Part shown: positions 15,817 through 36,427 of the stretch, one piece after another
Numbering within the stretch: position 1 is the stretch's first letter
Layout of the letters: the number at the start of each line of letters is the position of its first letter
The notes under the pieces: generated by a model
Told to the model about the DNA's origin: nothing
Database searches by the model: none
Seen by the model: only the letters and a program-made list of their open reading frames with translations
IMG/VR virus record: IMGVR_UViG_3300049855_000348
Coordinates: 124,001-188,000 of that record
Length of the DNA: 64,000 nt
Reading direction: 5' to 3' (one strand)
Made by a program: the position numbers and the translations under genes

Positions 15817-15846
15817 CGCCTAACCTTCAGGCTGCCTGATCAGAGA

Positions 15847-17646: not shown

Positions 17647-18396
17647 TTACTTCTTGATGCCGGCCAGACGGCGCATGCGTTCCATCTGGGGGCTGAAGCC
17701 CTTCTGGGTGCCCTGTTCGCCCTCGGCGATGACCTTCTCACCCTTGCCGGTGGAGTCGAGGTGTTCCTCGTTGGCGGACGTGCCCTTGGTCGGGGCGGTC
17801 TCTTCGACGGTGACCTGGAGGCTGGTTTCCAGGCTCTCGCGGAGTTCCTTGACCGTGCCTTCGGCGACGTTGGCACGGGCGGTCTGCTCCAGGACCTTCT
17901 TCTTCTCGCCCTTGATCTGCTCTTCGAGGGCGGCGACCTTGGTCTTGAGGTCCGTGACTTCCTTCGGATCGACCTTGGCACCTTCGGTGATCTCGGCCTT
18001 GCCCTTGGTGATCAGCTTCTCGACCTCTTCGAGGAGAGCCGAGCCGCGCTTGGCTTCGGTCTGCTCGGCGATGCGGGCGAGACGGTCACCATGGCTGTCG
18101 ATGGCGGAGACCAGGAGACCCTTCACGCGCTCGGCGAGAAGTTTCTCGTACTTGGTCAGTTCCTCCTTGATCGTCTTGTCGCCAGCTTCCTTGGCTTCTT
18201 CCAGCTTCTCCAGGTAGGAGGCTTCGAGCTTGATCTTCTCGGCCTTGACGGCTTCGGTGATCGCACCCTTCTTGCTGGCTTCGGCTTCGGCGACGGTCTT
18301 GGTGTAGAACGCCTCCAGCGACTCGACCACCTTGGTCGACTCGTCGGCACCGATGGTCTCGGTCAGGAGCTTCTTGAGATCGGCTGGGACGGGCAT
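17647..18396 (-). CDS. Prohead core/scaffold protein, gp22-like
   Basis: Charged coiled-coil protein between the protease and capsid genes (T4 order 21-22-23); many [LIV]xE motifs; TACATA and an AGAAGGA SD upstream. Confidence 0.75.
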   Translation of the reverse strand: MPVPADLKKLLTETIGADESTKVVESLEAFYTKTVAEAEASKKGAITEAVKAEKIKLEASYLEKLEEAKEAGDKTIKEELTKYEKLLAERVKGLLVSAIDSHGDRLARIAEQTEAKRGSALLEEVEKLITKGKAEITEGAKVDPKEVTDLKTKVAALEEQIKGEKKKVLEQTARANVAEGTVKELRESLETSLQVTVEETAPTKGTSANEEHLDSTGKGEKVIAEGEQGTQKGFSPQMERMRRLAGIKK

Positions 18397-18427: not shown

Positions 18428-19111
18428 TTACTTGATACCCAGCCAGCGATCGACGAGCGATGCCAAACCGAGCTTCTGAGTGGATGGGCGGGCTTTGGTG
18501 AACTCGCAGAACTCACGGATCAGTTGCTCACTGACCACTGAGGGGCGGGCACCTGGGGTGCTGGGGTCATGGACCAGATCGTAGGTCTTCATCGAGTAGT
18601 CTTCACCCACCATGGTGTCACCACCCTTGGTGAAGAGACTGCCGGCACCACGACTGGAAGTTCCGACCTTGCCACCCAGGGCATCGCAGCAGCCGATGGC
18701 AGCCGGGCCGAGGGGCAGTGACGGGATGAGCGTCATGCGTCCTTCGGTGATGCCGCTGGAGTTCATGTGCAGACGGTCGATCCGCAGACAGGTCTTCTGC
18801 ATGTTGATGTTGACCGTCTCGGGGTGATCGAGTTCCCCGAGGATGCCGCCGTTCTCTTTGATGATCTGCTGGAGCTTCTTGGTCTCACGCTCCAGGATGT
18901 GGAGCGGGTAGATGCGACCGTTCTTGTTGCGGGTGTTGGCCCGCTGGAACAGACCTTCGAGGACACGGGTGCCGCCCTCGCCGGCCTTCATCTCGCCCTC
19001 GAACAGGAAGGCTGCATGGCTTTCGCTGATGAGACCACGACGTGCTTCAAGAACGTCGTTCTCGTACGGCTTGACCTGCACCCATCCCTGTGATTCGAGG
19101 AGCGTCTTCAT
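18428..19111 (-). CDS. gp21: Prohead core protease, T4 gp21-like
   Basis: Motifs NKNGRIYP, GELDHP, SSRGAGSL and YDLVHDPSTPGA of gp21/S77 proteases. Confidence 0.95.
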   Translation of the reverse strand: MKTLLESQGWVQVKPYENDVLEARRGLISESHAAFLFEGEMKAGEGGTRVLEGLFQRANTRNKNGRIYPLHILERETKKLQQIIKENGGILGELDHPETVNINMQKTCLRIDRLHMNSSGITEGRMTLIPSLPLGPAAIGCCDALGGKVGTSSRGAGSLFTKGGDTMVGEDYSMKTYDLVHDPSTPGARPSVVSEQLIREFCEFTKARPSTQKLGLASLVDRWLGIK

Positions 19112-23271: not shown

Positions 23272-25209
23272 CTACTTCAAGAGCCATCCCAAGATATCTT
23301 CACCGGCGATCTCGTTCATCTCATGCATCTTCTCGATGAACTGACCGTGCTTGGTGCCCACGAGTAGGTCTTCACGCTTCTTCTTGGCCAGAATCTTCTC
23401 GGATGCCTCTGAGTAGACTGGCTTTGAGACCATGGTCTCCTGCTCGCCGATGGTCTCATTGACCAGCAGGACCGATTCCGGCTGCCGTGGGGTGGCCCGC
23501 TGGGCTGCCCGGATGACTTGGTCAGCGGTGCTGATGCACCATGCCATGATCAGATCGTCGTGGCTGTGGGAGTCCGCCTCGATACGACCTGTCTTGGTGA
23601 CGATGAACGTCTTGAGTTCGTCGATGAGACGGTGGCCATGGATGATCCAGGAATCGTCATAGAGACCCGATTCCAGGTCGGCGATCATCGTGTTGCGGGA
23701 CTTCGAGGTAGTCGTCCAACCCAGCTTCCCGTTCTCAGGGTCTGAGTAGATGCGCTTGTACTTCTGGATCTTGTCCAGACTGACCAGGGTCGCACCACCA
23801 GCCGTGGCGTTGACCTCGACGGCAATGACGGCGGTACCGTACCGGTAACCGGTGTGTGCCAGGATCGCAGCGTATTTGTCTTCTGGCAGCTTGCCTTGGA
23901 ACTCTGCGACCTGCTCGCCGGCTGTCACGTCGATCACATGGAACGCAGATTTGTCGAGACCACCAGCCGTGGCACAGTCAGCACCGATGGCGTATTTGTG
24001 AGCCGGTATCTTGGTGCCATCGGGGTTGATCTTCTCTCCGATGAAGTCTTTCCAGATGACCAACTTTCCACCGTATTCAAGACGCGGCTTCGGACTGTTC
24101 TCGTCCTTGGCGTAGGTGTCGGCAACGCGCTCCATCTTTTCGATGTGCTCGGAAGAGATGTAGGTGTTACCGGCAGCAAGGAATTTGCCCAAGACTTCCT
24201 GATCCCACTTGCGCTGACCAAGCTGACGGAGCACTGATGCTGCCCATTCCGGATTGTTGTAGTCCGGATGGTCGGTGTATTCCATGCGAGCGACTTTGAA
24301 GTCGTTCTCACCAGCGATGGCTTCCTGATATTTGTGGTAGTACCAACCACCGATGCCGCCCACACCGTTGACGGTTGAGACGACGAACACCGAACCCTTG
24401 GTGGACACGAGGGTGGGATAGATGCCGGCCCAGATGTCTTCGATGCGCTCGATGAAAGCCGCTTCGTCGATCACCAGGATCTTGGTGGTGAACGAACGAC
24501 CACCGGCCTTGCCAGATGGGAGTGAGCGGATCTTCGATTTGTTGGGCAGCCAAAGTTCAGTGGCTGATTCTTTCAGACCACGAGCACGATCCCACTTGAT
24601 GGGCTCGCCCTTGTCGTTGAGTCCACCACGCAGCCACTTCGGCAATGACTGATAGACTTCTTTCACATTTTCTTGCAGGTATTTCGTCGACTCACGTTGA
24701 CCGATCGAAATCACCATGCATTGCATGCGCGGGTGAACCAGGGAGTACCATAAACAGTACACCCCAGTGAGCAGCGACATGCCAGCCTGACGAAACTTCT
24801 TGGTGATGACGAAACGTTCGTTCATCAACATCTGCGCAGTGCGAAGCTGATATGGGTAGAGTTTGAAGTGAACGTAACCGTGAAGCTGGTTGTTGATCCA
24901 GACGTACTTCGAGCAGAAGTATTCAAAGCCAGTCTGCGGATCAGCAATCTTCGCCCATTCATCACAGATACGCTGGTACACCGATGGGTTGGTCATCCCA
25001 TTGAATTGCGGTGCATCCGGTGCTGGCTTTGGTGCCGGGCTGTGCTGCTGAATACCGTCTTCAGAACCTGGAGGTGTGTTCGTGCTTGGCGGCTGTTCTT
25101 CCTCATCGTCAGCAACAGCCGTAGCGCCAGTAGAGCGAAAATTCTTCAAAGCCTGCCGACCATTGTCGAGCAGGTTCTGGATATTCGCAAAGCCACTGCG
25201 TTTGAACAT
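23272..25209 (-). CDS. gp17: Terminase large subunit, T4 gp17-like
   Basis: KLYPYQ, KKFRQAGMS (Walker A), VIDEAAF (Walker B), STVNG coupling motif; RNase H-like nuclease motifs IGADCA and HDDLIMA. Confidence 0.95.
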   Translation of the reverse strand: MFKRSGFANIQNLLDNGRQALKNFRSTGATAVADDEEEQPPSTNTPPGSEDGIQQHSPAPKPAPDAPQFNGMTNPSVYQRICDEWAKIADPQTGFEYFCSKYVWINNQLHGYVHFKLYPYQLRTAQMLMNERFVITKKFRQAGMSLLTGVYCLWYSLVHPRMQCMVISIGQRESTKYLQENVKEVYQSLPKWLRGGLNDKGEPIKWDRARGLKESATELWLPNKSKIRSLPSGKAGGRSFTTKILVIDEAAFIERIEDIWAGIYPTLVSTKGSVFVVSTVNGVGGIGGWYYHKYQEAIAGENDFKVARMEYTDHPDYNNPEWAASVLRQLGQRKWDQEVLGKFLAAGNTYISSEHIEKMERVADTYAKDENSPKPRLEYGGKLVIWKDFIGEKINPDGTKIPAHKYAIGADCATAGGLDKSAFHVIDVTAGEQVAEFQGKLPEDKYAAILAHTGYRYGTAVIAVEVNATAGGATLVSLDKIQKYKRIYSDPENGKLGWTTTSKSRNTMIADLESGLYDDSWIIHGHRLIDELKTFIVTKTGRIEADSHSHDDLIMAWCISTADQVIRAAQRATPRQPESVLLVNETIGEQETMVSKPVYSEASEKILAKKKREDLLVGTKHGQFIEKMHEMNEIAGEDILGWLLK

Positions 25210-25216
25210 GCCTAAT

Positions 25217-25525
25217 CTACCAGCAACACTCGGGAAGCGGGACTTTCTGTCCCTTGAGTTCGTGGAAGCAGTCGTCGAGGAAGTGAATCACACCATCGGT
25301 CAGGAAGATGTGACAGCGACTCTCTGGGCGAGATCCGTTTACCAACAATGACGGCGTGAAGGTTGGCTTCTCCATGTCGCCATTCCACTGCCAGACCGGT
25401 TCACGGCCTTTGATGCGGTAGGGATGGTGGCTCTTGCAGCCTGGGCAGTAAAAGACCAACGTGATGTCCTCGGCCTGCTCGTCGGTCGTGGCGTCTCCGC
25501 TATACAGCTTTTTGAGGACTGACAT
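25217..25525 (-). CDS. DUF6527-like small Cys/His protein (family often mislabelled 'ammonia monooxygenase')
   Basis: CPGCKSHH...WQWNGDMEKPTFTPSLLV...CHIFLTDGVIHFLDDCFHELKGQKVPLP matches the family pattern as I recall it. Confidence 0.7.
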   Translation of the reverse strand: MSVLKKLYSGDATTDEQAEDITLVFYCPGCKSHHPYRIKGREPVWQWNGDMEKPTFTPSLLVNGSRPESRCHIFLTDGVIHFLDDCFHELKGQKVPLPECCW

Positions 25526-27146
25526 TGGTATCTCCCATGGCGAACGGTGCGTCTTCGTCTTCTTCCTTCGGCATGGGCGGTGGTTTACCGGTGGTCAGGA
25601 AGTAGGTGATGGCGGTACGCAGCATGGCGGGAATGGCTGATCCTTGAGTCTTGAGCAGCCACTGGAAGTAGGCTTTGTTGCCGACCAGGAACTTGGTGGC
25701 CTTGCCGACATCCGGGTAATCGATGGTGACACTGCCGTCATCGTTGACCACCAGAGACTCTGGATCGACGCCTGACGCCTGGGCGAAGCGATCCTTGATG
25801 GCCGTCAGGACCTTCTTCATGATCCAGGCTGGAGGCATCTTCATGCCCATGCGGCTGGCGATGGTAGCAAGGCGGAGGTCCATGGCTCCCCAGACCGGCC
25901 CAGGACTCGCCAGAAGCTCTTGGAAGCCCTTTTTCACTCCAACCGGGTTGCCGGCAGCCCCGACCAGTTTGATCGGTCCTGACGCCTGCTTACGGGCAGC
26001 AACGAAGCCATCCGGATCGCCATAGAGGGTCCAGTCGGCGATGCGCTGGGTGAACTTGTCTTTGTCCCAGGCTTTGCCGGTCTGTTTCTCGTAGCTGGTC
26101 TTGAACGTCTCGTAGGTCTTGTCGAGGTCCAGATTGTCAGCCGTGAAGACGGCTTCCCGCAAGATCTCGATCCGCTCCTTCAACGGCACAGCCTGCACCG
26201 GTGCTGGTGTAGGAGCCGGCTGAGGGGCTGGCTTCTGGGCGGCTGGTGCCATCTTCGACGGCTGGAGTTCCTTGTTGACGATCTCACGACCTTCGACCTT
26301 GCCGAGGTGGTAGTAGTCGAAGCCGGGCAGGATGGCGATCTTCTGCGGCGGAAAGTCACCGGTGACCACTGCGGTGCAGGCTTGGCCAACGATCTCAGTG
26401 AACAGCGCCGGCACTGCGGCAGGCGGTGCCATCTTGATGTGCGTGTTGTAGGCGCGGATCTCACCCTTGGTGCCGAACGGCTGACCACTCACGATGTGTG
26501 AGTAGTAATCGTGAACGGCACGGAACTTCAGATTCTGTTCATGAGTCCAGATCGGATGAGCGGTACCACCCTTCCAGATCTTGAGAACTTTGGTCTTCTT
26601 GACCTGATTCTTCATTTCCTCGGCATTGGGATACGGATCCTCGGCGACGTACTCGACCTTCACCACACCGGTGAGGCGCTTGTAAAGCGTCTCGATGTGG
26701 GTGATCAGAGACTTCCACGCAGGCGCAGCCTTCGCATCCATCATCGGAGCATCTTCGTAGGCTTTCGCCACGAGCTTGGAATACTCGCCGAAGTCTTTCA
26801 GTTGGATCGTCTCGGTGATCAGACCTTCCCTGATGACCTTGAGTTTTTTACCCTTCAATTCTGGCTCAGCGTATTTGATCGAAACGATGCATGCCCATGA
26901 GCCAGTCTTGTCGAGCCACTTCTTCAGGCCGGATTTGCTCTTGATGGCGAACACACCGCGACCATCAGCCCAACGAACAACGTAGGCTTTGCCTTCTTCA
27001 GCAGTTTCTGGCAGGTCTTTGTCGTCGATGATTGCCTGGACTTTGGCAACGTCGGCAGCCTCCGGCGCACCACCATCTTCGATCTCACGGATCTGACGGT
27101 GATTGCCGTAGGCTTTTCTCAGGATGCCTTTGATCGCTGGTCTCAC
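25500..27146 (-). CDS. Multi-domain probable internal virion protein (548 aa) with a FRAVHDxxxH...GE domain
   Basis: NLKFRAVHDYYSH...GEIRAY...ALFTEIVGQ is a motif I recognise from large phage polyvalent proteins. Domains are separated by ITE and LRE motifs and a Pro/Ala linker. Confidence 0.7.
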   Translation of the reverse strand: MRPAIKGILRKAYGNHRQIREIEDGGAPEAADVAKVQAIIDDKDLPETAEEGKAYVVRWADGRGVFAIKSKSGLKKWLDKTGSWACIVSIKYAEPELKGKKLKVIREGLITETIQLKDFGEYSKLVAKAYEDAPMMDAKAAPAWKSLITHIETLYKRLTGVVKVEYVAEDPYPNAEEMKNQVKKTKVLKIWKGGTAHPIWTHEQNLKFRAVHDYYSHIVSGQPFGTKGEIRAYNTHIKMAPPAAVPALFTEIVGQACTAVVTGDFPPQKIAILPGFDYYHLGKVEGREIVNKELQPSKMAPAAQKPAPQPAPTPAPVQAVPLKERIEILREAVFTADNLDLDKTYETFKTSYEKQTGKAWDKDKFTQRIADWTLYGDPDGFVAARKQASGPIKLVGAAGNPVGVKKGFQELLASPGPVWGAMDLRLATIASRMGMKMPPAWIMKKVLTAIKDRFAQASGVDPESLVVNDDGSVTIDYPDVGKATKFLVGNKAYFQWLLKTQGSAIPAMLRTAITYFLTTGKPPPMPKEEDEDAPFAMGDTNVSPQKAV

Positions 27147-27148
27147 GT

Positions 27149-28057
27149 TCAGCCCAGTGCGATCTCGACGATGGCCTTGCGGAGTTTGGTCTTGGTGCTC
27201 TCGGTGATCTCCTTCTTGACCTCGGTCTCATCCTTGCCTTCAGCGGCTTCGGCTTCGAGACCCGGCAGGCGATCCTGCATGTCTTCGATTGCACCTTCGA
27301 TGTCTTCGATCTTGGCCTTGAGCCAGTTCATTCCGTCCTCGGAAAGATCATGCTTGGCCAGCATCCGCTTGTAGCGACCGATGTTCATCTTCTCGATACG
27401 GATGGAGACACGGAGGTCAGCAGCCAATTCGGCTGCACCACCCTTGCGCTCGTCGGCTTCATCCTTGGCGGTTTCCAACTTCTCACGAGTTGGATCTTCG
27501 GCGATCTCCTTCTCCTCGTCATGACCTTCAGGCTGGTTCTTCACTTCGGGAGCATCATCGCTGAGCGAGTGTTCCTTCACGTCAGAAATCTGCACCACCG
27601 AGGTGACAGGGTCTGCACCCTTACCATCGAACGTGTGTCCGAGGTAGTATTTCTTCGCCTCTTCGAGCGTGCCATTGAAGCCGGTGTGCCAGTGGTTGCT
27701 CTTGGTTGACACCTTGAGGTTGATGCGCTTCTTCTTGGCGGTTTCTTCCTCTGATTCAGTGGCGGTATGGATCACTGGCTTGTCATCCACCTCAGCGAGA
27801 TGGGTGTGAACCATGTGCTTCTTGCTCTTGGACGGCTTGAAATGAGCGAGAGCCGCGTTGTGAGCATCAGCCCTGGTTTCGGCATGGGTCTCATGCTTCT
27901 TGTCGCCGAAGTAGGAGATGTAGCCGTACTTCTTCTTTGCCGCTGGCTGTGCGGTGGCGACTTTGGACTCATCGTTTTCAACGAGAGGTTTCTTGCCAAC
28001 TCCGAGGCTCTTCATCACCCCGGCGACAGATTCGTTGATGCGGAGGGAGTTGATCAT
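27149..28057 (-). CDS. Hypothetical acidic probable internal head protein (302 aa)
   Basis: Operon-coupled; INES, LVE, VKE and ITES motifs. Confidence 0.8.
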   Translation of the reverse strand: MINSLRINESVAGVMKSLGVGKKPLVENDESKVATAQPAAKKKYGYISYFGDKKHETHAETRADAHNAALAHFKPSKSKKHMVHTHLAEVDDKPVIHTATESEEETAKKKRINLKVSTKSNHWHTGFNGTLEEAKKYYLGHTFDGKGADPVTSVVQISDVKEHSLSDDAPEVKNQPEGHDEEKEIAEDPTREKLETAKDEADERKGGAAELAADLRVSIRIEKMNIGRYKRMLAKHDLSEDGMNWLKAKIEDIEGAIEDMQDRLPGLEAEAAEGKDETEVKKEITESTKTKLRKAIVEIALG

Positions 28058-28060
28058 GGC

Positions 28061-28396
28061 TCAGTCTTTCTTTCCGATGAGGGCGGCGATCTTCTTGAGG
28101 CGTTCTTCGAGTTTTGCAGCGTCTTTTCCATCACGCTTGTGATTGCTGATGCGGGCGCTCAAAGCATCATGTGCTGACTGGAGGTGAACATCCTCGTGGT
28201 CGGCGATGGTGGTCTCATTGACCTTCTTGGCCTTGGCGGCATCGGCTTTGTTGCGCTCGACCGTCTTCTGAAGACATGCCCCACAGGTGAAACGATCAGT
28301 ACACTGACAGTCCTTCGGCTTGTTCTTGCCGAAACGGGCTGGACCAGTGGTGACTTCGACGACAGGCTTCACGCCATGACGAATGATCTTGATCAT
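28061..28396 (-). CDS. Hypothetical protein (111 aa) with a CxC-x4-CxxC motif
   Basis: CQCTDRFTCGAC; coupled by 2-3 nt gaps to both neighbours. Confidence 0.75.
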   Translation of the reverse strand: MIKIIRHGVKPVVEVTTGPARFGKNKPKDCQCTDRFTCGACLQKTVERNKADAAKAKKVNETTIADHEDVHLQSAHDALSARISNHKRDGKDAAKLEERLKKIAALIGKKD

Positions 28397-28398
28397 GG

Positions 28399-29601
28399 TT
28401 AGATCCTCTTCACTTCACGGCTGCCGAGATTCTTCCAGAGAGCTTCTGGGTTATGCTCGTCAGCACGCTTGTTCTTCGTGTTGGCCACGATGTGAGCCTT
28501 GGCTGCTTCCTTGAACTTGCCCTTCAAGGTAGCGAAAGACTCCATCGGACGATGCAGCATATCGACCGTCAGCTTGTCACTGACGACGCCTGCCTGGATG
28601 CAACGTTGAACGATGTCCTTCAGCGTGTCCTTCTTGAAGTTGTCGTGATCGAGTGGCATGCCGACCTGAGCGGCCAGGAAGTAGATGATCTGAAGAGCAT
28701 CCGGGTGGAACGAATAGCGGTAGTCGATGTTCGACCAACGATCGTTCAGACGATTCTTGCTCTCATCCTTGTGCTTGAGGTAGTAGACGGCGGCCAGGGT
28801 TGCCTGATCGTCGTCGTTCTGCATCTCGCCGTGGGCACGCAGGAACTCGTAGTGGCTCTCGAAGTCGTCACCAGCTTCTCCGCCGACGGTCTTGTTCAGC
28901 CAGTCGGTGAGTTCGGCTTTGTTGTCGAGTTGCATCTGGTTGATGCGGTCGGCGAGACCAGATGCCTTCTTGGTCAGGCTCGCCATCTCAATGCCATCAC
29001 AGAGAGAGTGCATGATATCGATCTGTACCATGGCCTGACCACTCTTGTTGGTCAGATTACCGAGATTCGACTGCACACGCAGACGCTCGTCGTGATGATC
29101 CTTCCAGTTGGTCTGGCCATGACGAGCCTGGAGGATTGCACGCAGTTCACCGACGGTGAGCGGTTCAGCACCCTCACGGTAGATCGGGAACAGGAAACTG
29201 AACTGGTGGCCCATCTTCTGAGGATCGAGATCTTTGCCGCTGGTCTTGCTGGCGATGTCGCGGGTGTTCTGGGTGTTCTCGATCGCCCACTGCTTGATGC
29301 GTGACAGCGTCTCGGGCTTCTCCATGCGGATGATCACGTCGATGTCACCAAACACGGCACGGTTCTCCGCACCGAACTTGCCGGAGCCGATCATCTTGAC
29401 CTGTACGTCATCATCAGTCTCGGCGGCGATACCGTCGAACTTCGAGCGAAGCTGCTTGAGCGTCGACTCGATGAAAGCACGGGGGACAAGGTCTCCACCG
29501 AGGATTCCAGACTCCACAATGAGTGTAGAGGAGTTTGCACGCTCCAAAATCACTTCATTGAGGACGCTGACGAAGGCTCTTTGTGCGGATGGGCGGATCA
29601 C
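28399..29601 (-). CDS. Pol-beta superfamily nucleotidyltransferase, probably virion-associated
   Basis: IGSG...FGDIDVII (GS...DxD) and a third Asp in VQIDIM; N-terminal LNE/ILE/IVE motifs. Confidence 0.7.
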   Translation of the reverse strand: MIRPSAQRAFVSVLNEVILERANSSTLIVESGILGGDLVPRAFIESTLKQLRSKFDGIAAETDDDVQVKMIGSGKFGAENRAVFGDIDVIIRMEKPETLSRIKQWAIENTQNTRDIASKTSGKDLDPQKMGHQFSFLFPIYREGAEPLTVGELRAILQARHGQTNWKDHHDERLRVQSNLGNLTNKSGQAMVQIDIMHSLCDGIEMASLTKKASGLADRINQMQLDNKAELTDWLNKTVGGEAGDDFESHYEFLRAHGEMQNDDDQATLAAVYYLKHKDESKNRLNDRWSNIDYRYSFHPDALQIIYFLAAQVGMPLDHDNFKKDTLKDIVQRCIQAGVVSDKLTVDMLHRPMESFATLKGKFKEAAKAHIVANTKNKRADEHNPEALWKNLGSREVKRI

Positions 29602-30974
29602 GTCTGCTTCCCCTTTGGGGAGTTGATGTTCTCGAACACCTCCAAGAGGCTCCCCTTCTTGGTCTTCTTCTCGATCGTCTTGCGACCATCTTCGACGGAG
29701 TCGCCGATATGATCCTTGTAGGGATATTGGCTACGACTCTTCTTCATCGGCTGCTTCTGAGGTCTGGTCTGTTGCTGCTGCGGCTGAGGTTGCGGTTTAG
29801 GTTGAGGCGGTTGTGGCACTGCTGGCCCACCAGTCTCTTCACCACCCTGAGCAGAATCCTGCTGCGGCGGTACTGGCTTCACTTCCGGTGCCGGTGGCTT
29901 GGCCGGCTGAGGGGCAGGTTCGGCAGCCTGCTGAGCGGCTGGCTGCTGAGCGGCTGGCTGTTGCTGGGCTGGCGGCTGGGCCGGTTGCTGTTGGGCTGGC
30001 TGAGCGTTCGGATCGACCTTGGCCCATTCGTACTGCGACGCCGGCAATGAGATTGTGCTCTTCCCATCGGCTGATGGCTTTCCAGTGTTGATGACGTAGT
30101 TGCCCTTGTCATCGACAATAGCGACCTTGCCAGTGTGAACCTGATTGGTTTTCGGATCCGTAGCAGTGACCTCATCACCTTCCTCGAATTTCTTATCGAA
30201 GGTGACTTTCTTCGCCGGTGGTTGAGCCGGTTGTGGTGCCGGCTTGGCAGCGGGCTGCTGTTGTTGTGACTGCTGCTGTTGCGGCTTTGGCTGTTGCTGC
30301 TGTTGCGGCTTTGACTGTTTCGGTTCCGAAGAACCTCCACCACTGAACACTCCAGCGTGATCACTCATCACACGCTGGATACCAGTTTTGATTGAGTTCT
30401 GGTCACCAGCGCCAGCTTTCACGGCTTTGTCGATACCATGCAGCGCACGAGCGGTCTGCACGTCACGAACTTTGATGCCCTTCTTCAGAGCCTCAGCTTT
30501 GTCCTGTGCAGTGATGAATGACTTCACCTGTGCAGCAGCTTCTTCCTTCGTCTTGCCCTGACCTTCGAGGCGCTTCTGAAGGTGATCACGAGCGGCTTGT
30601 GGGTTCTTCTTGTAGGCGTCGAGGAACTTCTCGGTCTCAGTCTCGTTGCCGAAAATCTTCTTCAGTTTCGTTTTGAATGCACCATAGAGGTAACGAAAAC
30701 CGCTGACTGCATCCCGCCAGATACCTTCGTTGATCAACTCGTACTGATCATGCTCATTGAGCACGAACATCTGATCTTCGTTCACTGCGACAACGAGATC
30801 ACCCAGAATGGCATCGGCCTTCTTCTCGACTACGATCTTGCGACCGTCAAGATGCGTGCTCTCCATGAGCGCCATGCCGTTCCTGGTGAACTGCCGGGCG
30901 ATCTTGGTGACCGGCTTCTGGCATTTCATCTCGTTGAGAACAGACGGGTGAATGTTCTTGCTGTGCAGGTACAT
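29598..30974 (-). CDS. Hypothetical P/Q-rich probable internal head protein (458 aa)
   Basis: GTGA overlap with the next gene; SD AGAGG and TACATA upstream; long QP/AQQP tracts flank a small beta domain (KFEEGDEVTATDP...). Confidence 0.8.
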   Translation of the reverse strand: MYLHSKNIHPSVLNEMKCQKPVTKIARQFTRNGMALMESTHLDGRKIVVEKKADAILGDLVVAVNEDQMFVLNEHDQYELINEGIWRDAVSGFRYLYGAFKTKLKKIFGNETETEKFLDAYKKNPQAARDHLQKRLEGQGKTKEEAAAQVKSFITAQDKAEALKKGIKVRDVQTARALHGIDKAVKAGAGDQNSIKTGIQRVMSDHAGVFSGGGSSEPKQSKPQQQQQPKPQQQQSQQQQPAAKPAPQPAQPPAKKVTFDKKFEEGDEVTATDPKTNQVHTGKVAIVDDKGNYVINTGKPSADGKSTISLPASQYEWAKVDPNAQPAQQQPAQPPAQQQPAAQQPAAQQAAEPAPQPAKPPAPEVKPVPPQQDSAQGGEETGGPAVPQPPQPKPQPQPQQQQTRPQKQPMKKSRSQYPYKDHIGDSVEDGRKTIEKKTKKGSLLEVFENINSPKGKQT

Positions 30975-30987
30975 GCTGGCCTCTGAG

Positions 30988-32292
30988 TTATGTAGCGGCC
31001 TGGGAATCCGAGATCAGGTCTGCCAGCTTGGTCTTGATGAACTTGTTCGCCTCGACCAGGAAAGCATCCCACAGGGCACCACGGCCAGTATGGCGATCGG
31101 TCGGGACATTCTCGTCGTTGAGGTGCAGGGCGTAGAGGTCACCAGGGACACCCTCCTCCTCCAGGTGTCTGCGAACCCACTGCATCACTGCATCTTCGGT
31201 CACATCACCCTTGATTTCCTCCAGCGAGTGGATGGCTTGGGTGATCGGGTCGTGATTGGCGTCGGCGAAGAGATAACGACCGACCTGACCACGTACCCAG
31301 GCCGACAGGTAATTCAGGTCGCGGTAGTCTTCCAAGTGCTCACGGCTGTTGGCACCGTATTCCTCGATCGTGTCGGCGATCTCCTTGTCTACGTCGGCTG
31401 CCCGGCGATAGAGTTTGGCGACAACGTCCCTGTAGGCATCCCGCGTAACCGCTGTGCTGTCCGAGACTTTGCCCTGCTTGTCGAGTTTGCGAATGTCGAA
31501 ATCGTCGAAACGTCGAATGGCGTGTCGAAAGAAACGCTCGTAGTCCTTCTCGGTCGGCTGGTCACCGGCCTGGGCCAGGAAGTTGTTCAGGATCTGGCTG
31601 AAGGCTGGGTCCTGTTCAGCCGACTTGGCCATGCCTGCCACGACCTTCTCAGGTGCCTCCAGACGGCCACGGAAGAGCAACGGCAGGCTGTCGGTACCCA
31701 GCTTGTGGGCGATGCTCTGGACCTGCGCATGGCTCTCCCAGCGACCGGCCATCTTCAGCGCCTGTTCCTCGATCTCACCAGGGTCAGTGAGTAGGTCAGA
31801 GAGACCGGTTTCGGGCACCTCATACTTCACGCCGACCACGACCATCCTGGCCTTGGCATCGTCCTTGTGCAGGCGCGTTTCCGGGTTGCGGGTACCGATC
31901 TCCACCACGATCAGGGTACCAGGATCGACAGCATCGAGCTTGCCGGACTTGGTACGCTGGATGATCTGTTCAATCGGCTTGCGCAGATCCTTCTGGGTGA
32001 AGCCAATGGAGAAGCCGACGTTATCGTCATCGAGATGGTTGAGATCGACCTCGTAGCGACCAGACCAGAAGCGCCAGCAGTCCTCGGGATTGTTGGCGGT
32101 GTCCTTCTCCTTCGTGCGGTAGCACTTCAGCAAGGCACCACTGGAATGGGCAACGATCTCGACTTCCTGAGCGTGTAGGTAGCGGACCAGATCCTCACCG
32201 CCGTTGTGCTCGATGAAGTCTGACAGTGCCTTGAAGCGGGGCTCCATGGCTTGGGCGATGTCTTCACAGAGAATGCGTTTGTGGTGGATCAT
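30988..32292 (-). CDS. Hypothetical protein (434 aa)
   Basis: ATGA overlap with the upstream gene; typical codon usage. Confidence 0.8.
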   Translation of the reverse strand: MIHHKRILCEDIAQAMEPRFKALSDFIEHNGGEDLVRYLHAQEVEIVAHSSGALLKCYRTKEKDTANNPEDCWRFWSGRYEVDLNHLDDDNVGFSIGFTQKDLRKPIEQIIQRTKSGKLDAVDPGTLIVVEIGTRNPETRLHKDDAKARMVVVGVKYEVPETGLSDLLTDPGEIEEQALKMAGRWESHAQVQSIAHKLGTDSLPLLFRGRLEAPEKVVAGMAKSAEQDPAFSQILNNFLAQAGDQPTEKDYERFFRHAIRRFDDFDIRKLDKQGKVSDSTAVTRDAYRDVVAKLYRRAADVDKEIADTIEEYGANSREHLEDYRDLNYLSAWVRGQVGRYLFADANHDPITQAIHSLEEIKGDVTEDAVMQWVRRHLEEEGVPGDLYALHLNDENVPTDRHTGRGALWDAFLVEANKFIKTKLADLISDSQAAT

Positions 32293-32984
32293 TTGGGTAG
32301 TTCTCCGTCATCGCCCCAGGCATCGCCATCGCCCTTCTTGGCTTGCTGGATCTTGAGTGCGGCCAGAGCGGCGGCATCGCCGTTCTTCTGGGCATTGACC
32401 AGGAGTTCAGCCACCTTGTGAACCTGTTCACTGGCCTTCATCGCCAGTTCGAGGGATTTGAGAGTCGCACCGGTGTTGTCGGCGATGACTGTCGCCACTG
32501 GCATCGACAACTGCATGCTGTCCAGAACTTCGGCACGATCGAGATGCACCTGGAATAGCGAGATGGCCATTGCACGGTTGTGCTGGGCCAGTTGCAGGTC
32601 CTTGTTCAACAGGACTGCGAGGTTCTTCTCGAACGTACCCTGATCGCTCAGATCGAACGTAGTGGGTGCTGAAGCATCGGCCTTGGCCACTGTTCCACGT
32701 GGAACAACGCTTGGCAGCGCCACGGCCTTTGGACCACCAGCGGCAGCAGCCGGCTGACCCTGGCCGGAACCGCCCTGCCCGCCCGGCTGACCCTGGCCGC
32801 CAGCGGCTTGCGCGACCGCATTGGCCGGTTGAGCGGTCAATGGCGGGGCGATGGCCTGCGACTGTGGCGTAGGCGGCGGGAGCGCCACCGCCTTGTGAGC
32901 CGGGTTCTGAGAGGTGGGCAGCGTCCCGAGGAGGTCATCCAGCATCTGGATGGCGGGTGGTTCTGGGGGCTGCTCTCCACTCAT
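32289..32984 (-). CDS. Hypothetical protein (231 aa): P/G-rich N-terminus and helical C-terminus; weak small-terminase candidate
   Basis: ATGA overlaps at both ends; function speculative. Confidence 0.7.
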   Translation of the reverse strand: MSGEQPPEPPAIQMLDDLLGTLPTSQNPAHKAVALPPPTPQSQAIAPPLTAQPANAVAQAAGGQGQPGGQGGSGQGQPAAAAGGPKAVALPSVVPRGTVAKADASAPTTFDLSDQGTFEKNLAVLLNKDLQLAQHNRAMAISLFQVHLDRAEVLDSMQLSMPVATVIADNTGATLKSLELAMKASEQVHKVAELLVNAQKNGDAAALAALKIQQAKKGDGDAWGDDGELPK

Positions 32985-33709
32985 GCGTTGAAGACCTGAT
33001 CCAGCAGCTTGGTACGCTCCTCATCCGACAGCACGGCCTCTTTGAGTTCGGTGCTGCGGGGCGTGGTGAGCTTGCCGGGATTGGTGATCTCGTGATGACC
33101 CTGCGGACGGCCTGCGCCGTCCTTGCCGTAGCCAGCCGGCACGTTCTTGCCGTCAGCGCCAGGGAAGATGTCCTTGGCACGCTGCGCTGGGCGCTTGTCA
33201 GCCGCATCATCGTTGAAGGACTGCTTGTCGTCCGGGTTTGCAGCATCTTCAGCGGGCTGGACGGTGAGTTTTTCAACAGCCGTGCTGCCACCTTCAACAC
33301 TCTCGACAGCCTGCACCACCGGCTTGCCGGAGGCACCCTGCTGACGATTCGCCATGGCATCCTGCTGGATGCCTTTGGAGGCGGCAGTCGGGCTGATCTT
33401 GGTCGGCTTCGGCTGGGCGGTGAGGTTCTTGTTCACCTGCTCCTGCTGCTTCGGGTCGATACCCTGCTGGTGGGCCATGTCCGCCTTGACGGCCTGATCA
33501 CCCTGCTGGGCGTTGGCGGCAGCGGTGGCCTGCACTCCATTGGCCAGTTGCTGGGCGGCAGTCTGCACCTGCTGCTGGGGCTTGCCCGGTGCCATCTTCA
33601 CCGGCTTGCCGGGAGTGGGCAGGGCGGTGCCGCCAGCGGCCTGGGCATTGGAGGAACCCTGAAGTTCTTCCAGGATGGCGGCGACGTTTTCGTGGTAGAC
33701 TCGGCGCAT
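32981..33709 (-). CDS. Hypothetical Q/A-rich protein (242 aa)
   Basis: Operon-coupled; YHEN, ILEE and LKEA motifs. Confidence 0.8.
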   Translation of the reverse strand: MRRVYHENVAAILEELQGSSNAQAAGGTALPTPGKPVKMAPGKPQQQVQTAAQQLANGVQATAAANAQQGDQAVKADMAHQQGIDPKQQEQVNKNLTAQPKPTKISPTAASKGIQQDAMANRQQGASGKPVVQAVESVEGGSTAVEKLTVQPAEDAANPDDKQSFNDDAADKRPAQRAKDIFPGADGKNVPAGYGKDGAGRPQGHHEITNPGKLTTPRSTELKEAVLSDEERTKLLDQVFNA

Positions 33710-33712
33710 AGG

Positions 33713-34381
33713 TCAGACCTTTTTGAACTGGATGGCCAACTGGCTCTTGAGCACCCCAGCACCAACAGGCTTGAGCGCCTTGGACTGGACGATGCGACCG
33801 AAACGACGGAGGGCGAGCGGATCCTTGGGATCGAGGGCGCTCTGCGTCTTCATGACGCGCACGATCTCCTTGACCAAGTTCGGCGACATGACCTTCGAGC
33901 CCGGATCGACAGTCGTTCCCAGGGGAGCGATAGCACGGGTGACGTTGTCGAAACGGCGAATGCGCAGACTCGAACCGTCACGGCTGATGCGGTAGTGCTT
34001 GCCCTGTTTGCCGACGGCAACGATGGCAAGAATCTTGCTCTCTTTGAGATCGAAAAGGTTGGAATAGCCGATGTAATCCGCATTTTGGTAATGCAGACCA
34101 CCCTTGCTCAGGAAGGTGATGTCGTAGCCCAGATCACGCAGCACCCACGACAGCGTCTGGAGCGTGCTGAGGAACTGGCCGTAGTCGCTGATGTCGATCG
34201 GGTAGTCGGTGCCACCCCACTTGTTCTTGATCGGACCCTTGGCCTCGACCTTCTTGACGATCGTGTTGATGCGATCGGCCTTCTCGTCGGAGCCGCTTTC
34301 ACCGGTGGCGTAGGCCATGCCGTTGTAGGGCCAGCGATTCTGGAAGCCGGCGTTCTTGCGTTGGATGGTCAGCAGGTCCAT
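33713..34381 (-). CDS. Hypothetical protein (222 aa)
   Basis: 3-nt gaps to both neighbours; globular composition. Confidence 0.8.
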   Translation of the reverse strand: MDLLTIQRKNAGFQNRWPYNGMAYATGESGSDEKADRINTIVKKVEAKGPIKNKWGGTDYPIDISDYGQFLSTLQTLSWVLRDLGYDITFLSKGGLHYQNADYIGYSNLFDLKESKILAIVAVGKQGKHYRISRDGSSLRIRRFDNVTRAIAPLGTTVDPGSKVMSPNLVKEIVRVMKTQSALDPKDPLALRRFGRIVQSKALKPVGAGVLKSQLAIQFKKV

Positions 34382-34384
34382 GGG

Positions 34385-34942
34385 TTACTCCACCAGCTTG
34401 GCGAGATCTTTGACGGCGTTCATCACGGCCTGGATGGGGCCACGCAACGTCAGTTTGTGAGTCTTGATCGAGTTGTCGCTGGCCTTGTTCTCGGTCAGCG
34501 CCTGGATGAGCAGGTCGACGGTCTTGATATTGGCCGTCACCTCGGTCATCTTGTCGGACACGTCCTGGAGAGTGTTCAACGACGTGGCAGGCTTCTTGAG
34601 CTTGACTTCTGGGTTCGTGGGTGGCTTTGCGCCCTGATTTTGGCCGTTGGGGGCTCCAGCCTTGTTTTGTGGCTGCATGCCGCTAGCCTGCCCGGCCTTG
34701 GGATCCACCGCTGGGGCTTCACCCGGCATATCGAGGGGCGACGTGCCACCAGCTTCGCTGATGATATCCTCGGGCTTCATGCGAACGCCGAGTTCTTCCA
34801 GAACGCTGTTGACGCGGGGATCCACCTTGCCGCGCTCTTCGCGCATCTTGTTTTCCGAATGGTTCGGATCGACGCCCATCTTCTGGAGGGCTTTGGCGAC
34901 TTGGGCATTCACTCCACCGGTGCGTTTCTGAAACATGGTCAC
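34385..34942 (-). CDS. Hypothetical protein (185 aa), first gene of the long minus-strand late operon
   Basis: SD GGGAG upstream; contains IISEAG and ends LVE. Confidence 0.8.
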   Translation of the reverse strand: MTMFQKRTGGVNAQVAKALQKMGVDPNHSENKMREERGKVDPRVNSVLEELGVRMKPEDIISEAGGTSPLDMPGEAPAVDPKAGQASGMQPQNKAGAPNGQNQGAKPPTNPEVKLKKPATSLNTLQDVSDKMTEVTANIKTVDLLIQALTENKASDNSIKTHKLTLRGPIQAVMNAVKDLAKLVE

Positions 34943-34975
34943 TCCCGGCTATCAGCCTGTCACATAGGTACCAGC

Positions 34976-36427
34976 ATGTTGACCTTCTCCTACTCGAACG
35001 CTTGGACAGCCACCTACCAGGGTGACGTTCGGGGCGTCGCGTGGCTGAAGCGTCTGTTCACCTACACCGACATGGCAGACACCCGGCACAAGCAGCGGCT
35101 GGGTTATTTTCCCTCCTACTGCACGCTCGACACCGATGGGTGCCGGATGTCCCACGGGCAGGTGATCCACGCTGTACGGCACGCCAAAGCCGACGGCATC
35201 CCCATCACGATCAATGACCCCAGTTGCCGGTATCTGGTCGAATCTGGTCCTATCCCGCCAGATTACCTTCCGGAGATCACCGGGTACGACTACCAACTTT
35301 TGTCAGCCCAGATCGCCCTGGGCAGCGGGCACGGGCTGGTGGTGATCGCCACCGGTGGTGGCAAGACCGTCGTGATCGGGATGGTGCTCAAAGCTCTGGC
35401 CACCATGACCAACGTTCAGGGTATCCTGATCCTGATCTACTCGAAGGACCTGCTGAACCAAACCGCCAAGCGGATGGAGAAGTACGGTGTCCCAAGTGAC
35501 GACATCGGTGTCATCCACTCCGACATCCCACCAGCCAAGCAGGCTATCGCAGCCACGAAGCGCATCGTGCTCGCCACCCACACCTCCATCGCCAAGTACC
35601 ATGGGGTGATCGAACGGACGCAATACGTGCTGGTCGATGAGGGTCACCGGGCGGTCGGCCCACTTTACTCCGCCCTGTTCGGCAAGCTGCCCAACCTCGT
35701 GAACATCCTCGGCTTCACCGCCACACCATGGGACAACGAAGCTGAGCGGATGAAGATGCTGGCGATCTATGGCCAGATCCTGGTGAACATCCCGGTGCGC
35801 TTCCTCATCGATCGCGGTGTGTTGATGAATCCCGAGGTCTACTTCATCAAGCTCTACTACAAAGACCGCGACATCAAACTGTGCAATCAGATGGAATGGC
35901 GTGAAGCCAAGACTCAGTTCATTCTTGAAGACCGTAACCGCAATCTGCTACCGATCGTTGCTCTGAAGAAGTTCGGTGGTCGCATGCTCGTCATCTATGA
36001 CGATCTCGACCATGGCGAGCATCTACAACAACTTTACATCGAGCAAGGTTTCGAGACTCGTCTCGCTGAAGGAAAGACTTCCACTAAGAATCGTGCGAAT
36101 GCCATCGAATGGTTCGAGCAAGACTGCGAGCCTGGACAGTGGGGCAAGGTTCTGCTCGCCTCGAAGGTATTCGATGAGGGTGTCGACATCAAAGGCGGCT
36201 GCGACATTTTCTTCGCCATCGGTGCCGGAAAAGATGTCAGCAAAGTTGCACAGCGACTCGGTCGTGCTCTACGAAAAAACCGCAGCGGTAAACTGCGGTG
36301 TTTCGACTGCCAGGACAGCAATCATCCAATCCTGTCGCGGTGGTCATCCACTCGTCGTGGGGCGATCGAGGATCTGAAGATTCCGGTGAAGACGATCAGC
36401 CTGGAAGAGTTTGCGGTTCTGACTTGA
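34976..36427 (+). CDS. uvsW: SF2 DNA helicase, UvsW-like (true start 34976, not 32957)
   Basis: IATGGGKT (motif I), VDEGH (II), GFTATP (III), VFDEGVDI (V) and QRLGRALR (VI). The upstream part of the tracked ORF is the antisense shadow of minus-strand genes. Confidence 0.9.
   Translation: MLTFSYSNAWTATYQGDVRGVAWLKRLFTYTDMADTRHKQRLGYFPSYCTLDTDGCRMSHGQVIHAVRHAKADGIPITINDPSCRYLVESGPIPPDYLPEITGYDYQLLSAQIALGSGHGLVVIATGGGKTVVIGMVLKALATMTNVQGILILIYSKDLLNQTAKRMEKYGVPSDDIGVIHSDIPPAKQAIAATKRIVLATHTSIAKYHGVIERTQYVLVDEGHRAVGPLYSALFGKLPNLVNILGFTATPWDNEAERMKMLAIYGQILVNIPVRFLIDRGVLMNPEVYFIKLYYKDRDIKLCNQMEWREAKTQFILEDRNRNLLPIVALKKFGGRMLVIYDDLDHGEHLQQLYIEQGFETRLAEGKTSTKNRANAIEWFEQDCEPGQWGKVLLASKVFDEGVDIKGGCDIFFAIGAGKDVSKVAQRLGRALRKNRSGKLRCFDCQDSNHPILSRWSSTRRGAIEDLKIPVKTISLEEFAVLT

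What the first reader, a model, noticed from the sequence alone, without database searches (positions are those of the whole stretch)
25500..34942. 9.4-kb operon of uncharacterised genes marked by [ILV]-x-E processing motifs: a candidate injected-protein arsenal
Ten genes are coupled by 0-13 nt gaps or 4-nt overlaps and run into terminase. Most carry [ILV]xE followed by a small residue near their termini (IISE|A, YHE|N, LCE|D, LNE|M, LME|S, INE|G, IVE|S, VNE|T, INE|S, ITE|S, ITE|T), as do gp21, gp22 and the capsid protein. Established: T4 gp21 cleaves after (I/L)-x-E, and internal proteins such as IPI and Alt carry cleaved capsid-targeting propeptides. Inference: a large set of head-packaged proteins delivered with the DNA, including at least two enzyme-like domains and several P/Q-rich disordered proteins.
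Basis: partly seen in the sequence, partly recalled or inferred. Interest (0 to 1): 0.62.

Follow-up and report, generated by a model that had tools for sequence, protein, structure and literature searches.

The report
Leader-tagged phage head cargo operon
Ten tightly packed genes upstream of the terminase of a 220-kb T4-like phage most likely encode proteins that a shared N-terminal tag loads into the head and the head protease trims, but this rests on sequence comparison only.

Summary
The gene layout is confirmed. Ten minus-strand genes (34942-25500) are coupled by 2-13 nt gaps or 4-nt overlaps. They run, with no strong terminator, through BubE, TerL, a T4-type portal, an acidic 629-aa protein, an S77 (gp21-like) protease and the scaffold.

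Bare [ILV]xE is not enriched (p=0.21), and with a small next residue only marginally (OR 1.6, p=0.04). A narrower form, [ILV][NTS]E + small, is enriched in the operon (9 seen, 1.8 expected) and in the head genes (15 vs 2.2), but not in the rest of the genome (46 vs 39.6).

I found a stronger mark. Five to seven of the ten proteins start with a shared leader, about [NHR]-[PE]-S-[VA]-x-x-[IV]-[LM]-E, which ends in the cleavage-type motif, like the T4 capsid-targeting sequence.

- g7 is a Pol-beta-fold nucleotidyltransferase.
- g10 has constant end domains around a swappable slot. The slot holds ART-PolyVal in a sister phage, and [ILVM]xE is kept at both junctions.

Relatives exist only as metagenome contigs. 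Packaging, cleavage and injection are untested. Verdict: new variant of a known kind; interpretation partly supported.

The parts
34385..34942 (-). g1, 185 aa (likely ATG at 34936): two leader-like repeats (res 13-26, 41-54), candidate site after E63, P/Q/G-rich linker, conserved C-terminal coiled coil
   Evidence: the site is kept in 4 of 6 orthologues
33713..34381 (-). g2, 222 aa, basic, conserved globular protein with no leader and no conserved site
32981..33709 (-). g3, 242 aa: N-terminal leader (res 6-19) followed by an A/Q/P-rich low-complexity body
32289..32984 (-). g4, 231 aa: P/Q/G-rich N-terminal half, conserved helical C-terminal domain, no leader
30988..32292 (-). g5, 434 aa: conserved site after E10 (3 of 3 orthologues with an intact N-terminus); function unknown
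29598..30974 (-). g6, 458 aa: leader (res 9-21), two sites kept in 4 of 4 orthologues, long P/Q-rich regions
28399..29601 (-). g7, 400 aa Pol-beta-fold nucleotidyltransferase: leader res 3-16, sites after E16 and E30, fold starts near res 38
   Evidence: G72 S73, D86 x D88, D195, E30 S31 G32 invariant in 27 sequences; Z 10.3 to Pol X palm+thumb
28061..28396 (-). g8, 111 aa, basic, Cys-rich N-terminus and helical C-terminus; only its C-terminal half is shared with relative L001
27149..28057 (-). g9, 302 aa: best leader match (res 8-21), sites after E9 and E27; res 39-95 is a mini-domain also found inside the acidic head protein of relative L007
   Evidence: leave-one-family-out E=0.022
26811..27146 (-). 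g10 constant N-terminal domain (res 1-112), ending in a junction site after E112
26262..26810 (-). g10 slot domain (res 113-295): viral-only family with an invariant H..R.VHD...H..GE..E..Q..QK..D pattern, confident model, no PDB neighbour
25500..26153 (-). g10 constant C-terminal domain (res 332-548), preceded by a junction site after E331
25217..25525 (-). BubE/DUF6527 small Cys-rich protein; overlaps the end of g10 by 26 nt
23272..25209 (-). Large terminase
21031..23010 (-). T4-type portal, with three conserved [ILV]xE sites in its C-terminal tail
19114..21003 (-). Acidic 629-aa protein (pI 4.4) between portal and protease; likely a prohead core protein
18428..19111 (-). S77 (T4 gp21-like) prohead protease; site after E30 kept in 5 of 5 orthologues
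17647..18396 (-). Scaffold-like coiled-coil protein with several conserved sites
17597..17622 (-). First strong intrinsic terminator downstream of g1 (11-bp stem)
15847..17406 (-). gp23-like major capsid protein; site after E55 kept in 3 of 3 orthologues, just before the Pfam Gp23 domain
34976..36427 (+). Divergent SF2 helicase that bounds the operon; about 33 bp separate the two start codons

Best explanation
The ten genes are late genes, probably co-transcribed with the head-assembly genes. Most of their products are cargo of the prohead.

Proposed mechanism:
1. A short N-terminal leader, about [NHR]-[PE]-S-[VA]-x-x-[IV]-[LM]-E, brings the protein into the assembling core. This would be the counterpart of the T4 capsid-targeting sequence.
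2. The leader ends in, or is followed within about 30 residues by, a hydrophobic-x-Glu site.
3. The S77 protease cuts at that site, removing the tag. In g10 it would also separate the three domains.
4. The mature proteins stay in the head and are probably delivered with the DNA. They include a Pol-beta-fold nucleotidyltransferase (g7) and a slot protein (g10) whose middle domain is exchanged between relatives.

Shown here: the gene order, the protease family, the motif and leader statistics, the orthologue conservation, the domain swaps and the NTase fold.

Inferred only: late co-transcription, targeting, cleavage, retention in the head and ejection.

g2 and g4 have neither leader nor site and may be helpers rather than cargo.
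For: - Head module: T4-type head module with S77 protease, catalytic His and Ser positions aligned to T4 gp21.
- Positive controls: conserved hydrophobic-x-Glu sites in the capsid protein (3/3), protease (5/5), scaffold and portal tail.
- Narrowed motif: enriched in the operon (9 vs 1.8 expected) and in head genes (15 vs 2.2), not in the rest of the genome (46 vs 39.6). The enrichment is specific to Glu.
- Conserved N-terminal sites: g7 E30-S31-G32 in 27/27, lying in the unstructured part before the fold; g5 3/3; g6 4/4; g9 2/2; g1 4/6.
- Leader: found de novo in relatives. A leave-one-family-out profile ranks g9 third in the whole proteome, E=0.022. By regex it occurs in 5/10 operon proteins vs 3/231 others, and in relatives in 16/45 operon vs 2/43 other proteins. 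The residue just after the regex is Glu in 11 of 23 leaders.
- g10 family: constant ends, with a slot that is empty or holds a Zn ribbon, the HD...H domain or ART-PolyVal. [ILVM]xE is kept at both junctions while P2 varies.
- Links to heads elsewhere: the slot domain is a separate gene between scaffold and capsid genes in L006; it lies in the head gene region of mycobacteriophage Alice and in an annotated structural protein of Rhodococcus phage E3; a g9 segment recurs in the acidic head protein of L007.
- Transcription: no strong terminator from g1 to the scaffold.
- T4 precedent: a shared 10-residue targeting sequence that ends in the cleavage motif, and variable internal proteins (PMC9026906). 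Polyvalent and ART cargo are predicted to be injected (PMC5512222).
Against: - There are no proteomic, expression or structural data for this phage or any relative.
The narrowed motif and the leader regex were chosen after seeing the data.
- Retention of [ILVM]xE in operon orthologues (0.49) equals that in TerL and helicase (0.49) and is close to control triplets.
- Leave-one-family-out detection is weak for g1 and g3 and fails for g6.
- Two leader-like hits lie outside the operon. One (genome 52765-53856) sits beside tail-type genes.
- Standalone homologues of the g10 slot domain sit among small early-type genes in two other phage contigs, yet keep the hydrophobic-x-Glu just before the domain. 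That site may therefore be structural.
- The invariant E30-S31-G32..G35-G36-D37 of g7 may be part of the enzyme rather than a cleavage site.
- g1-g7 are syntenic across the whole clade, which is more typical of structural genes than of arms-race effectors.
Confidence: 0.55

Rival explanations
1. The proteins are assembly-only components of a large prohead core. They act as extra scaffold, are built in with the scaffold and the acidic protein, are chopped by the protease and expelled before DNA packaging, and are not delivered to the host.
For: - g1-g7 are conserved in order across relatives down to 41% identity.
- Many have coiled-coil or P/Q-rich low-complexity regions.
- Several carry more than one site, as the scaffold does.
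- A g9 segment is shared with the acidic core-like protein.
- In T4 most core proteins are degraded and removed (PMC9026906).
Against: - g7 and the g10 slot domains are conserved, well-folded, enzyme-like domains, which is hard to reconcile with disposable scaffold.
- The sister phage places an ADP-ribosyltransferase in the slot.
- Candidate sites cluster at N-termini and domain borders rather than throughout the proteins.
Confidence: 0.2
2. The proteins are late cytoplasmic proteins that never enter the head, for example packaging, DNA-end or host-takeover factors. The shared N-terminus would serve another purpose, such as binding a common partner or chaperone.
For: - Standalone homologues of the g10 slot domain lie in early-type gene regions of other phages.
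- No small terminase subunit was recognised next to TerL, so some small coiled-coil genes (g8, g9) could act in packaging.
- A leader-like N-terminus also occurs beside tail-type genes.
Against: - Glu-specific motif enrichment is shared only with the head genes.
- Junction sites are kept in every g10 variant.
- The slot domain sits inside head gene clusters in L006 and in Alice, and in an annotated structural protein of E3.
- The leaders end in the protease-type motif.
Confidence: 0.15
3. The motif signal is a by-product of composition and helical periodicity in Glu-rich, helix-rich proteins, and the leader is a weak chance resemblance. On this view there is no common processing or targeting signal.
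For: - Bare [ILV]xE is not enriched (p=0.21), and the motif with a small next residue only at p=0.038.
- Orthologue retention is no better than for control triplets.
- The profile E-values for the leader are mostly above 0.01.
- The narrowed patterns were defined after the fact.
Against: - Shuffles that keep each protein's composition still give z 6.1 for the operon against z 1.0 for the rest of the genome.
- D, K, R and Q controls are flat.
- Leader hits fall at residues 2-9 of the proteins, far more often than position-blind chance allows.
- Glu at the first position outside the regex occurs in 11 of 23 leaders.
Confidence: 0.1

Closest known systems
T4 internal proteins (IPI, IPII, IPIII, Alt) with capsid-targeting sequences cut by gp21
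   Same: - S77 protease in a T4-type head module.
- Cargo proteins otherwise unrelated to one another share a short N-terminal tag that ends in hydrophobic-x-Glu.
- Cargo content varies between relatives.
- An ADP-ribosyltransferase is among the cargo of a sister phage (PMC9026906).
   Different: - The leader sequence is unrelated to the T4 tag and is longer (about 12-30 residues).
- The cargo genes form one block directly upstream of the terminase and head genes.
- The set is larger (about 7 proteins, 20-60 kDa), mostly not basic, and partly conserved across the clade.
- No sequence homology to any T4 internal protein was found.
Polyvalent proteins of phages and conjugative elements (Iyer et al. 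2017, PMC5512222)
   Same: - g10 combines unrelated domains in one polypeptide in a late-gene context.
- Its orthologue carries ART-PolyVal (PF18760, 8.9e-20).
- The slot domain also occurs in the 858-aa E3 gp205 structural protein, next to a ParB-domain protein.
   Different: - The window's g10 has no domain from the published polyvalent set that Pfam recognises.
- It has only three domains.
- Conserved protease-type sites at both junctions suggest it is cut into pieces rather than acting as one chain.
Processed ejection and inner-body proteins of phiKZ-like giant phages (201phi2-1, phiKZ, SPN3US)
   Same: - Many head proteins are cut after Glu by a gp21-related protease.
- Propeptides carry redundant sites.
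- A large protein mass is ejected with the DNA (PMC9026906, PMC5694885, PMC7411985).
   Different: - Those phages use S/A-x-E, not hydrophobic-x-Glu.
- Their genes are scattered.
- No homology to the proteins here.
- This phage has a true gp23/gp20-type head module.
Family X DNA polymerases and other Pol-beta-fold nucleotidyltransferases
   Same: g7 has the G-S, D-x-D and third Asp signature. Its model aligns best to the Pol beta, mu and lambda palm+thumb (Z 10.3-9.7, 155-166 residues).
   Different: - No 8-kDa or fingers domain, 10-15% identity, Pfam below cutoff (15.4 vs 25 bits).
- It has a long helical C-terminal region of its own.
- Poly(A) polymerases, TUTases and CD-NTases score only slightly lower.

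Membership tests
Peptidase S77 (T4 gp21 prohead protease), the enzyme the hypothesis needs | Match to the family model above the curated cutoff, and catalytic His and Ser present | tested here: met
   PF03420 at 54.8 bits (cutoff 27) and PHROG head maturation protease at 1e-30. The alignment to T4 gp21 (5JBL, 6e-9) places the query's His and Ser at the two catalytic positions.
T4-type capsid-targeted, gp21-processed head cargo | A short N-terminal sequence shared by otherwise unrelated cargo proteins | tested here: inconclusive
   A leader was found and is strongly position-biased. Cross-family profile support is significant only for g9 (E=0.022), and the pattern was defined after the fact.
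T4-type capsid-targeted, gp21-processed head cargo | Hydrophobic-x-Glu cleavage site at the end of the tag | tested here: inconclusive
   Glu follows the [IV][LM] pair in 11 of 23 leaders, and conserved sites exist in g1, g5, g6, g7, g9 and g10. Overall motif retention equals the controls. Actual cleavage was not observed.
T4-type capsid-targeted, gp21-processed head cargo | Presence in the mature head and ejection into the host | not testable with these tools
   No proteome or infection data are available.
Polyvalent proteins (Iyer et al. 2017) | Two or more domains of disparate biochemical activity in one polypeptide, drawn from the recurrent polyvalent domain set, in a packaging or late-gene context | tested here: inconclusive
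   The context is met. The orthologue P0160 (in L001) carries ART-PolyVal. The window's g10 has three domains, none recognised by Pfam.
Pol-beta superfamily nucleotidyltransferase (g7) | G-[GS] motif, D-x-D pair and a third acidic residue on the NTase fold | tested here: met
   G72-S73, D86-x-D88 and D195 are invariant in 27 sequences. Fold matches are to the Pol X palm at Z 10.3, then PAPs, TUTases and CD-NTases.
Family X DNA polymerase (g7) | 8-kDa and fingers domains with helix-hairpin-helix DNA-binding motifs next to the palm and thumb; family model above cutoff | tested here: not met
   Only the palm and thumb align (model residues 32-355 to chain residues 142-338). PF14792 scores 15.4 bits, below the cutoff of 25.
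T4 Alt-type ADP-ribosyltransferase | ART domain present in the window's protein | tested here: not met
   No ART family matches any of the ten proteins even at E<=5. Only the L001 orthologue has an ART, and it belongs to the PolyVal clade.

The most novel reading that the evidence does not exclude
The leader is a portable capsid-loading tag of a T4-like jumbo-phage clade so far known only from metagenomes. It loads a conserved set of about seven proteins into the head. One of them is a Pol-beta-fold nucleotidyltransferase that would act on the incoming genome or on host nucleic acids at the moment of entry. Another is a 'socket' protein whose middle domain is exchanged between strains (ADP-ribosyltransferase, a new-fold HD...H enzyme, a Zn ribbon) and is released by protease cuts at both junctions.
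Probability: 0.3. Interest if true: 0.72.

Novelty: new variant of a known kind. Interest (0 to 1): 0.55.

Why it matters
If the model holds, the T4 rule of 'tag, load, cut' extends to a distant jumbo-phage lineage that uses a different tag and a much richer, enzyme-bearing cargo.

- It gives a sequence rule for predicting head cargo in uncultured phages.
- It offers a ready-made loading tag for engineering.
- It points to two untested virion-delivered activities: a Pol-beta-fold nucleotidyltransferase, and a widespread viral domain with a confident model but no solved structural neighbour.
- The g10 socket, with its swapped middle domain, shows how phages may exchange delivered effectors without disturbing packaging.

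If the model fails, the region is simply a conserved block of late genes of unknown function.

Tried and rejected
- Family scans: PHROGs and Pfam scans of all ten proteins gave almost nothing.
- Close relatives: megablast of the operon and tblastn of g2, g5 and g7 against 50,697 phage records found no match. A scan of IMG/VR with TerL found no relative.
- Orthologue retention of [ILVM]xE against control triplets did not discriminate. I report this as a negative result.
- g5: the Atlas search gave no usable hit.
- g10 slot domain: the PDB sequence profile, Foldseek, VIA-wide and Atlas shape searches found only unnamed viral relatives. I considered an HD-phosphohydrolase or zincin-like reading from the invariant His/Asp pattern, but no fold match supports it (best Z 3.1).
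- Late promoter: the T4 late-promoter box TATAAATA is absent from the window, and the sigma-70 scan is at chance level.
- Complex prediction (protease with g7 residues 1-45) gave no verdict, score 0.01. This is not evidence either way.
I rebuilt it from stored references.
- The big representative search was not used, because names and context, not more distant hits, were what was missing.
- Rejected reading: the 1,156-aa plus-strand ORF over g1-g4 as a gene.
- Rejected reading: neck or tail genes as in T4's gene 13-15 position, because there is no PHROG structural hit.

Full report
**Setting**

The window is bases 124001-188000 of a single 220,489-bp contig with 56% G+C. Its minus strand carries a T4-type head module:
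- large terminase, 25209-23272;
- Portal_T4 portal, 23010-21031 (PF07230, 6.9e-80);
- an acidic 629-aa protein;
- a Peptidase_S77 prohead protease, 19111-18428;
- a coiled-coil scaffold-like protein;
- a gp23-type capsid protein, 17406-15847 (PF07068, 1.2e-52).

The protease aligns to T4 gp21 (5JBL, 6e-9), with His and Ser at the two catalytic positions. The nearest capsid proteins in 50,697 phage records are only about 30% identical: a 595-kb uncultured phage, Microcystis phage Mel-JY01 and Flavobacterium phages. The operon DNA matches nothing there.

**The observation**

The ten ORFs exist as described. Their junctions are 2-13 nt gaps or 4-nt overlaps, and the block runs into BubE/DUF6527 and the terminase.

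A 1,156-aa plus-strand ORF overlaps g1-g4, but over that part it is antisense noise. Its coding score there is 0.07 per codon, against 0.24-0.39 for the minus-strand genes. Only its last 483 codons are a real gene, an SF2 helicase at 34976-36427, the same length as in the relatives. Helicase and g1 therefore diverge from a gap of about 33 bp.

On the minus strand, no strong terminator occurs between g1 and the end of the scaffold gene. Strong terminators follow the scaffold and the capsid genes. One long late transcript from g1 to the scaffold is plausible but not shown.

**Is the motif more than chance?**

I called about 250 genes genome-wide and compared three sets: the operon (3,133 aa), five head genes (2,283 aa) and the rest (60,538 aa).

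| Pattern | Operon vs rest | Result |
|---|---|---|
| Bare [ILV]xE | 16.3 vs 13.6 per 1000 aa | p=0.21, not enriched |
| [ILV][NTS]E[SADGT] (narrowed after inspection) | 9 seen vs 1.8 expected from shuffles | z 6.1; OR 3.8, p=0.0014 |

For the narrowed pattern, the head genes give 15 seen against 2.2 expected (z 8.6). The rest of the genome gives 46 against 39.6 (z 1.0). Replacing Glu with Asp, Lys, Arg or Gln removes the enrichment. Within the first 115 residues, 5 of 10 operon proteins carry the narrowed motif against 13 of 187 others (p=0.0007).

A bulk test failed to discriminate. It asked whether [ILVM]xE triplets are retained in orthologues more than control triplets. Retention was 0.49 in the operon, 0.49 in terminase plus helicase, and 0.27-0.44 for the control triplets. 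Most occurrences are therefore ordinary, and only particular sites stand out.

**Relatives**

g7 has 33 homologues, all from metagenome assemblies, at 82-38% identity. Six contigs gave context. All share the same order: helicase (divergent), then homologues of g1 to g7, then 0-4 variable genes, then terminase, portal, acidic protein, protease, scaffold and capsid. The g1-g7 part is thus a conserved core, and the part after g7 (here g8-g10) is variable. One relative has an IS605 TnpB gene inserted in the block.

**Conserved sites**

In the presumed protease substrates, hydrophobic-x-Glu sites are kept across orthologues:
- capsid protein, after E55, just before the Gp23 domain (3/3);
- protease, after E30 (5/5);
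- several sites in the scaffold (4/4);
- three sites in the portal tail (5-6 of 6).

In the operon:
- g7 keeps E30-S31-G32 in 27 of 27 sequences, and a second site at E16 in 6 of 7. The AlphaFold model is disordered up to residue 35, and the fold starts near residue 38.
- g5 keeps a site at residue 10 (3/3).
- g6 keeps two sites (4/4).
- g9 keeps sites at E9 and E27 (2/2).
- g1 keeps a site at E63 (4/6).
- g2 and g4 have none.

**A shared leader**

Reading the N-termini of the variable genes in the relatives suggested a common start. An EM motif search on the first 40 residues of 45 operon proteins from the relatives alone returned a 14-residue consensus beginning N-P-S-V.

Profile searches:
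- A profile built from the relatives ranks g9 (E=0.002), g3 (0.013) and both copies in g1 at the top of the window genome's proteome, always at the N-terminus.
- Leaving one family out, g9 is still third in the proteome (E=0.022). g1 and g3 fall to rank 6, with E near 1. g6 is lost.

Regex test. The pattern is [NHRDSC][PE][SQRANDV][VAI]..[IVA][LMFVY] within the first 30 residues.
- It hits g3, g5, g7, g9 and g10, against 3 of 231 other proteins (p=2e-6, pattern chosen after the fact).
- In the relatives it hits 16 of 45 operon proteins against 2 of 43 others.
- The position just after the regex is Glu in 11 of 23 instances.

The leader therefore ends in [IV]-[LM]-E, which is a cleavage-type motif. 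T4's 10-residue capsid-targeting sequence has the same logic, and it is shared by otherwise unrelated internal proteins (PMC9026906). None of the five core head proteins has the leader.

**The enzymes**

g7 carries G72-S73, D86-x-D88 and D195, invariant in 27 sequences. Its model (pLDDT 78) aligns best to the palm and thumb of Pol beta, mu and lambda (Z 10.3-9.7). Poly(A) polymerases, TUTases and CD-NTases follow at lower scores. It is a Pol-beta-fold nucleotidyltransferase, not a family X polymerase.

g10 is modular. Compared with its L001 orthologue, residues 1-112 (44% identity) and 328-539 (75% identity) are shared, but the middle differs. L001 has ART-PolyVal there (PF18760, 8.9e-20), whereas the window has a different domain. 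A search with the C-terminal domain found ten family members. Their slots are:
- empty in three;
- the same HD...H domain in three;
- ART-PolyVal in one;
- a Zn-ribbon insert in one;
- a Zn ribbon plus the HD...H domain in one;
- in the tenth, the most distant (42% identity, 672 aa), only the C-terminal domain is shared, behind N-terminal repeats.

Every variant keeps [ILVM]-x-E followed by A, S, G, T or D after the N-terminal domain and again just before the C-terminal domain. The middle residue of the motif varies freely.

The window's slot domain (residues 113-295) belongs to a large viral-only family with twelve or more invariant polar residues. Its model is confident (pLDDT 92) but has no neighbour among solved structures.

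**Links to heads elsewhere**

- The slot domain is a separate gene between the scaffold and capsid genes in relative L006.
- It lies in the head gene region of mycobacteriophage Alice.
- It is part of gp205, annotated as a structural protein, in Rhodococcus phage E3.
- Residues 39-95 of g9 recur inside the acidic head protein of L007.

Against this, two standalone homologues of the slot domain sit among small early-type genes in other phage contigs, yet still have hydrophobic-x-Glu just before the domain. That one site may therefore be structural.

**Interpretation**

The best reading (0.55) is a block of head cargo that is tagged by a shared leader and trimmed by the S77 protease, with part of it probably delivered to the host. 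Rivals are assembly-only core proteins (0.20), late cytoplasmic proteins whose shared N-terminus has another use (0.15), and a compositional artefact (0.10). Packaging, cleavage and ejection remain inference.

Relative to T4 this is a new variant of a known kind. The logic is the same, but the tag is new, the cargo is new and partly conserved, and the socket architecture is new. Membership in the polyvalent-protein class is open for the window's g10. Membership in family X polymerases and in Alt-type ARTs was tested and not met.

**Limits**

- The narrowed motif and the leader regex were defined after inspection.
- Orthologues are not independent samples.
- Gene calls come from my own simple caller.
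- The complex prediction gave no verdict.

Noticed in passing
window 178-12162 (-): A single 3,994-aa ORF lies a few genes downstream of the capsid gene. No Pfam family is above cutoff, only a sub-threshold DUF5779 hit.
   Followed up: partly
window 32957-36427 (+): A 1,156-aa ORF whose first ~673 codons are antisense to g1-g4 and non-coding by codon score. An automatic gene caller could prefer it and erase three real genes. The true helicase is 34976-36427.
   Followed up: yes
window 26262-26810 (-) and proteins P0035-P0154: The g10 slot domain family is widespread in phage contigs, including contigs of 195 to 660 kb. It is 45-67% identical across the family and has an invariant H..R.VHD...H..GE..E..Q..QK..D pattern. 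Its model has pLDDT 92 but no solved structural neighbour (best Z 3.1). It is a candidate new enzyme fold.
   Followed up: partly
window 25217-25525 (-): A BubE/DUF6527 small Cys-rich protein is wedged between g10 and the terminase, overlapping g10 by 26 nt. A matching gene keeps this place only in relative L001; a 105-aa gene after the terminase in L003 was not recovered as a homologue.
   Followed up: no
L002 7237-8436; L002 16528-18277; L007 733-3210: In the relatives, an IS605 OrfB/TnpB gene is inserted inside the cargo block, the portal gene is split into two ORFs, and the divergent helicase carries an intein (Hint plus LAGLIDADG).
   Followed up: no
genome 6553-7596 (+) and 52765-53856 (+), i.e. 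L013 1553-2596 and L012 12765-13856: Two proteins outside the window start with the same leader-like sequence at residues 4-8. The second lies beside tape-measure-like and tail-type genes. Neither has a PHROG match.
   Followed up: partly
window 27941-27773 (g9 residues 39-95): A ~57-residue mini-domain (phrog_19202, 2.5e-8) is present in g9 but absent from its L001 orthologue. It is found at 58% identity inside the acidic head protein of L007, so it appears to move between head-associated proteins.
   Followed up: partly
L014 (Microcystis phage Mel-JY01, record 9986-17366): This distant relative also has a run of co-oriented hypothetical genes, plus a 'cytidylyltransferase like protein', directly upstream of its terminase. 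The layout is analogous, but no homology was detected.
   Followed up: no
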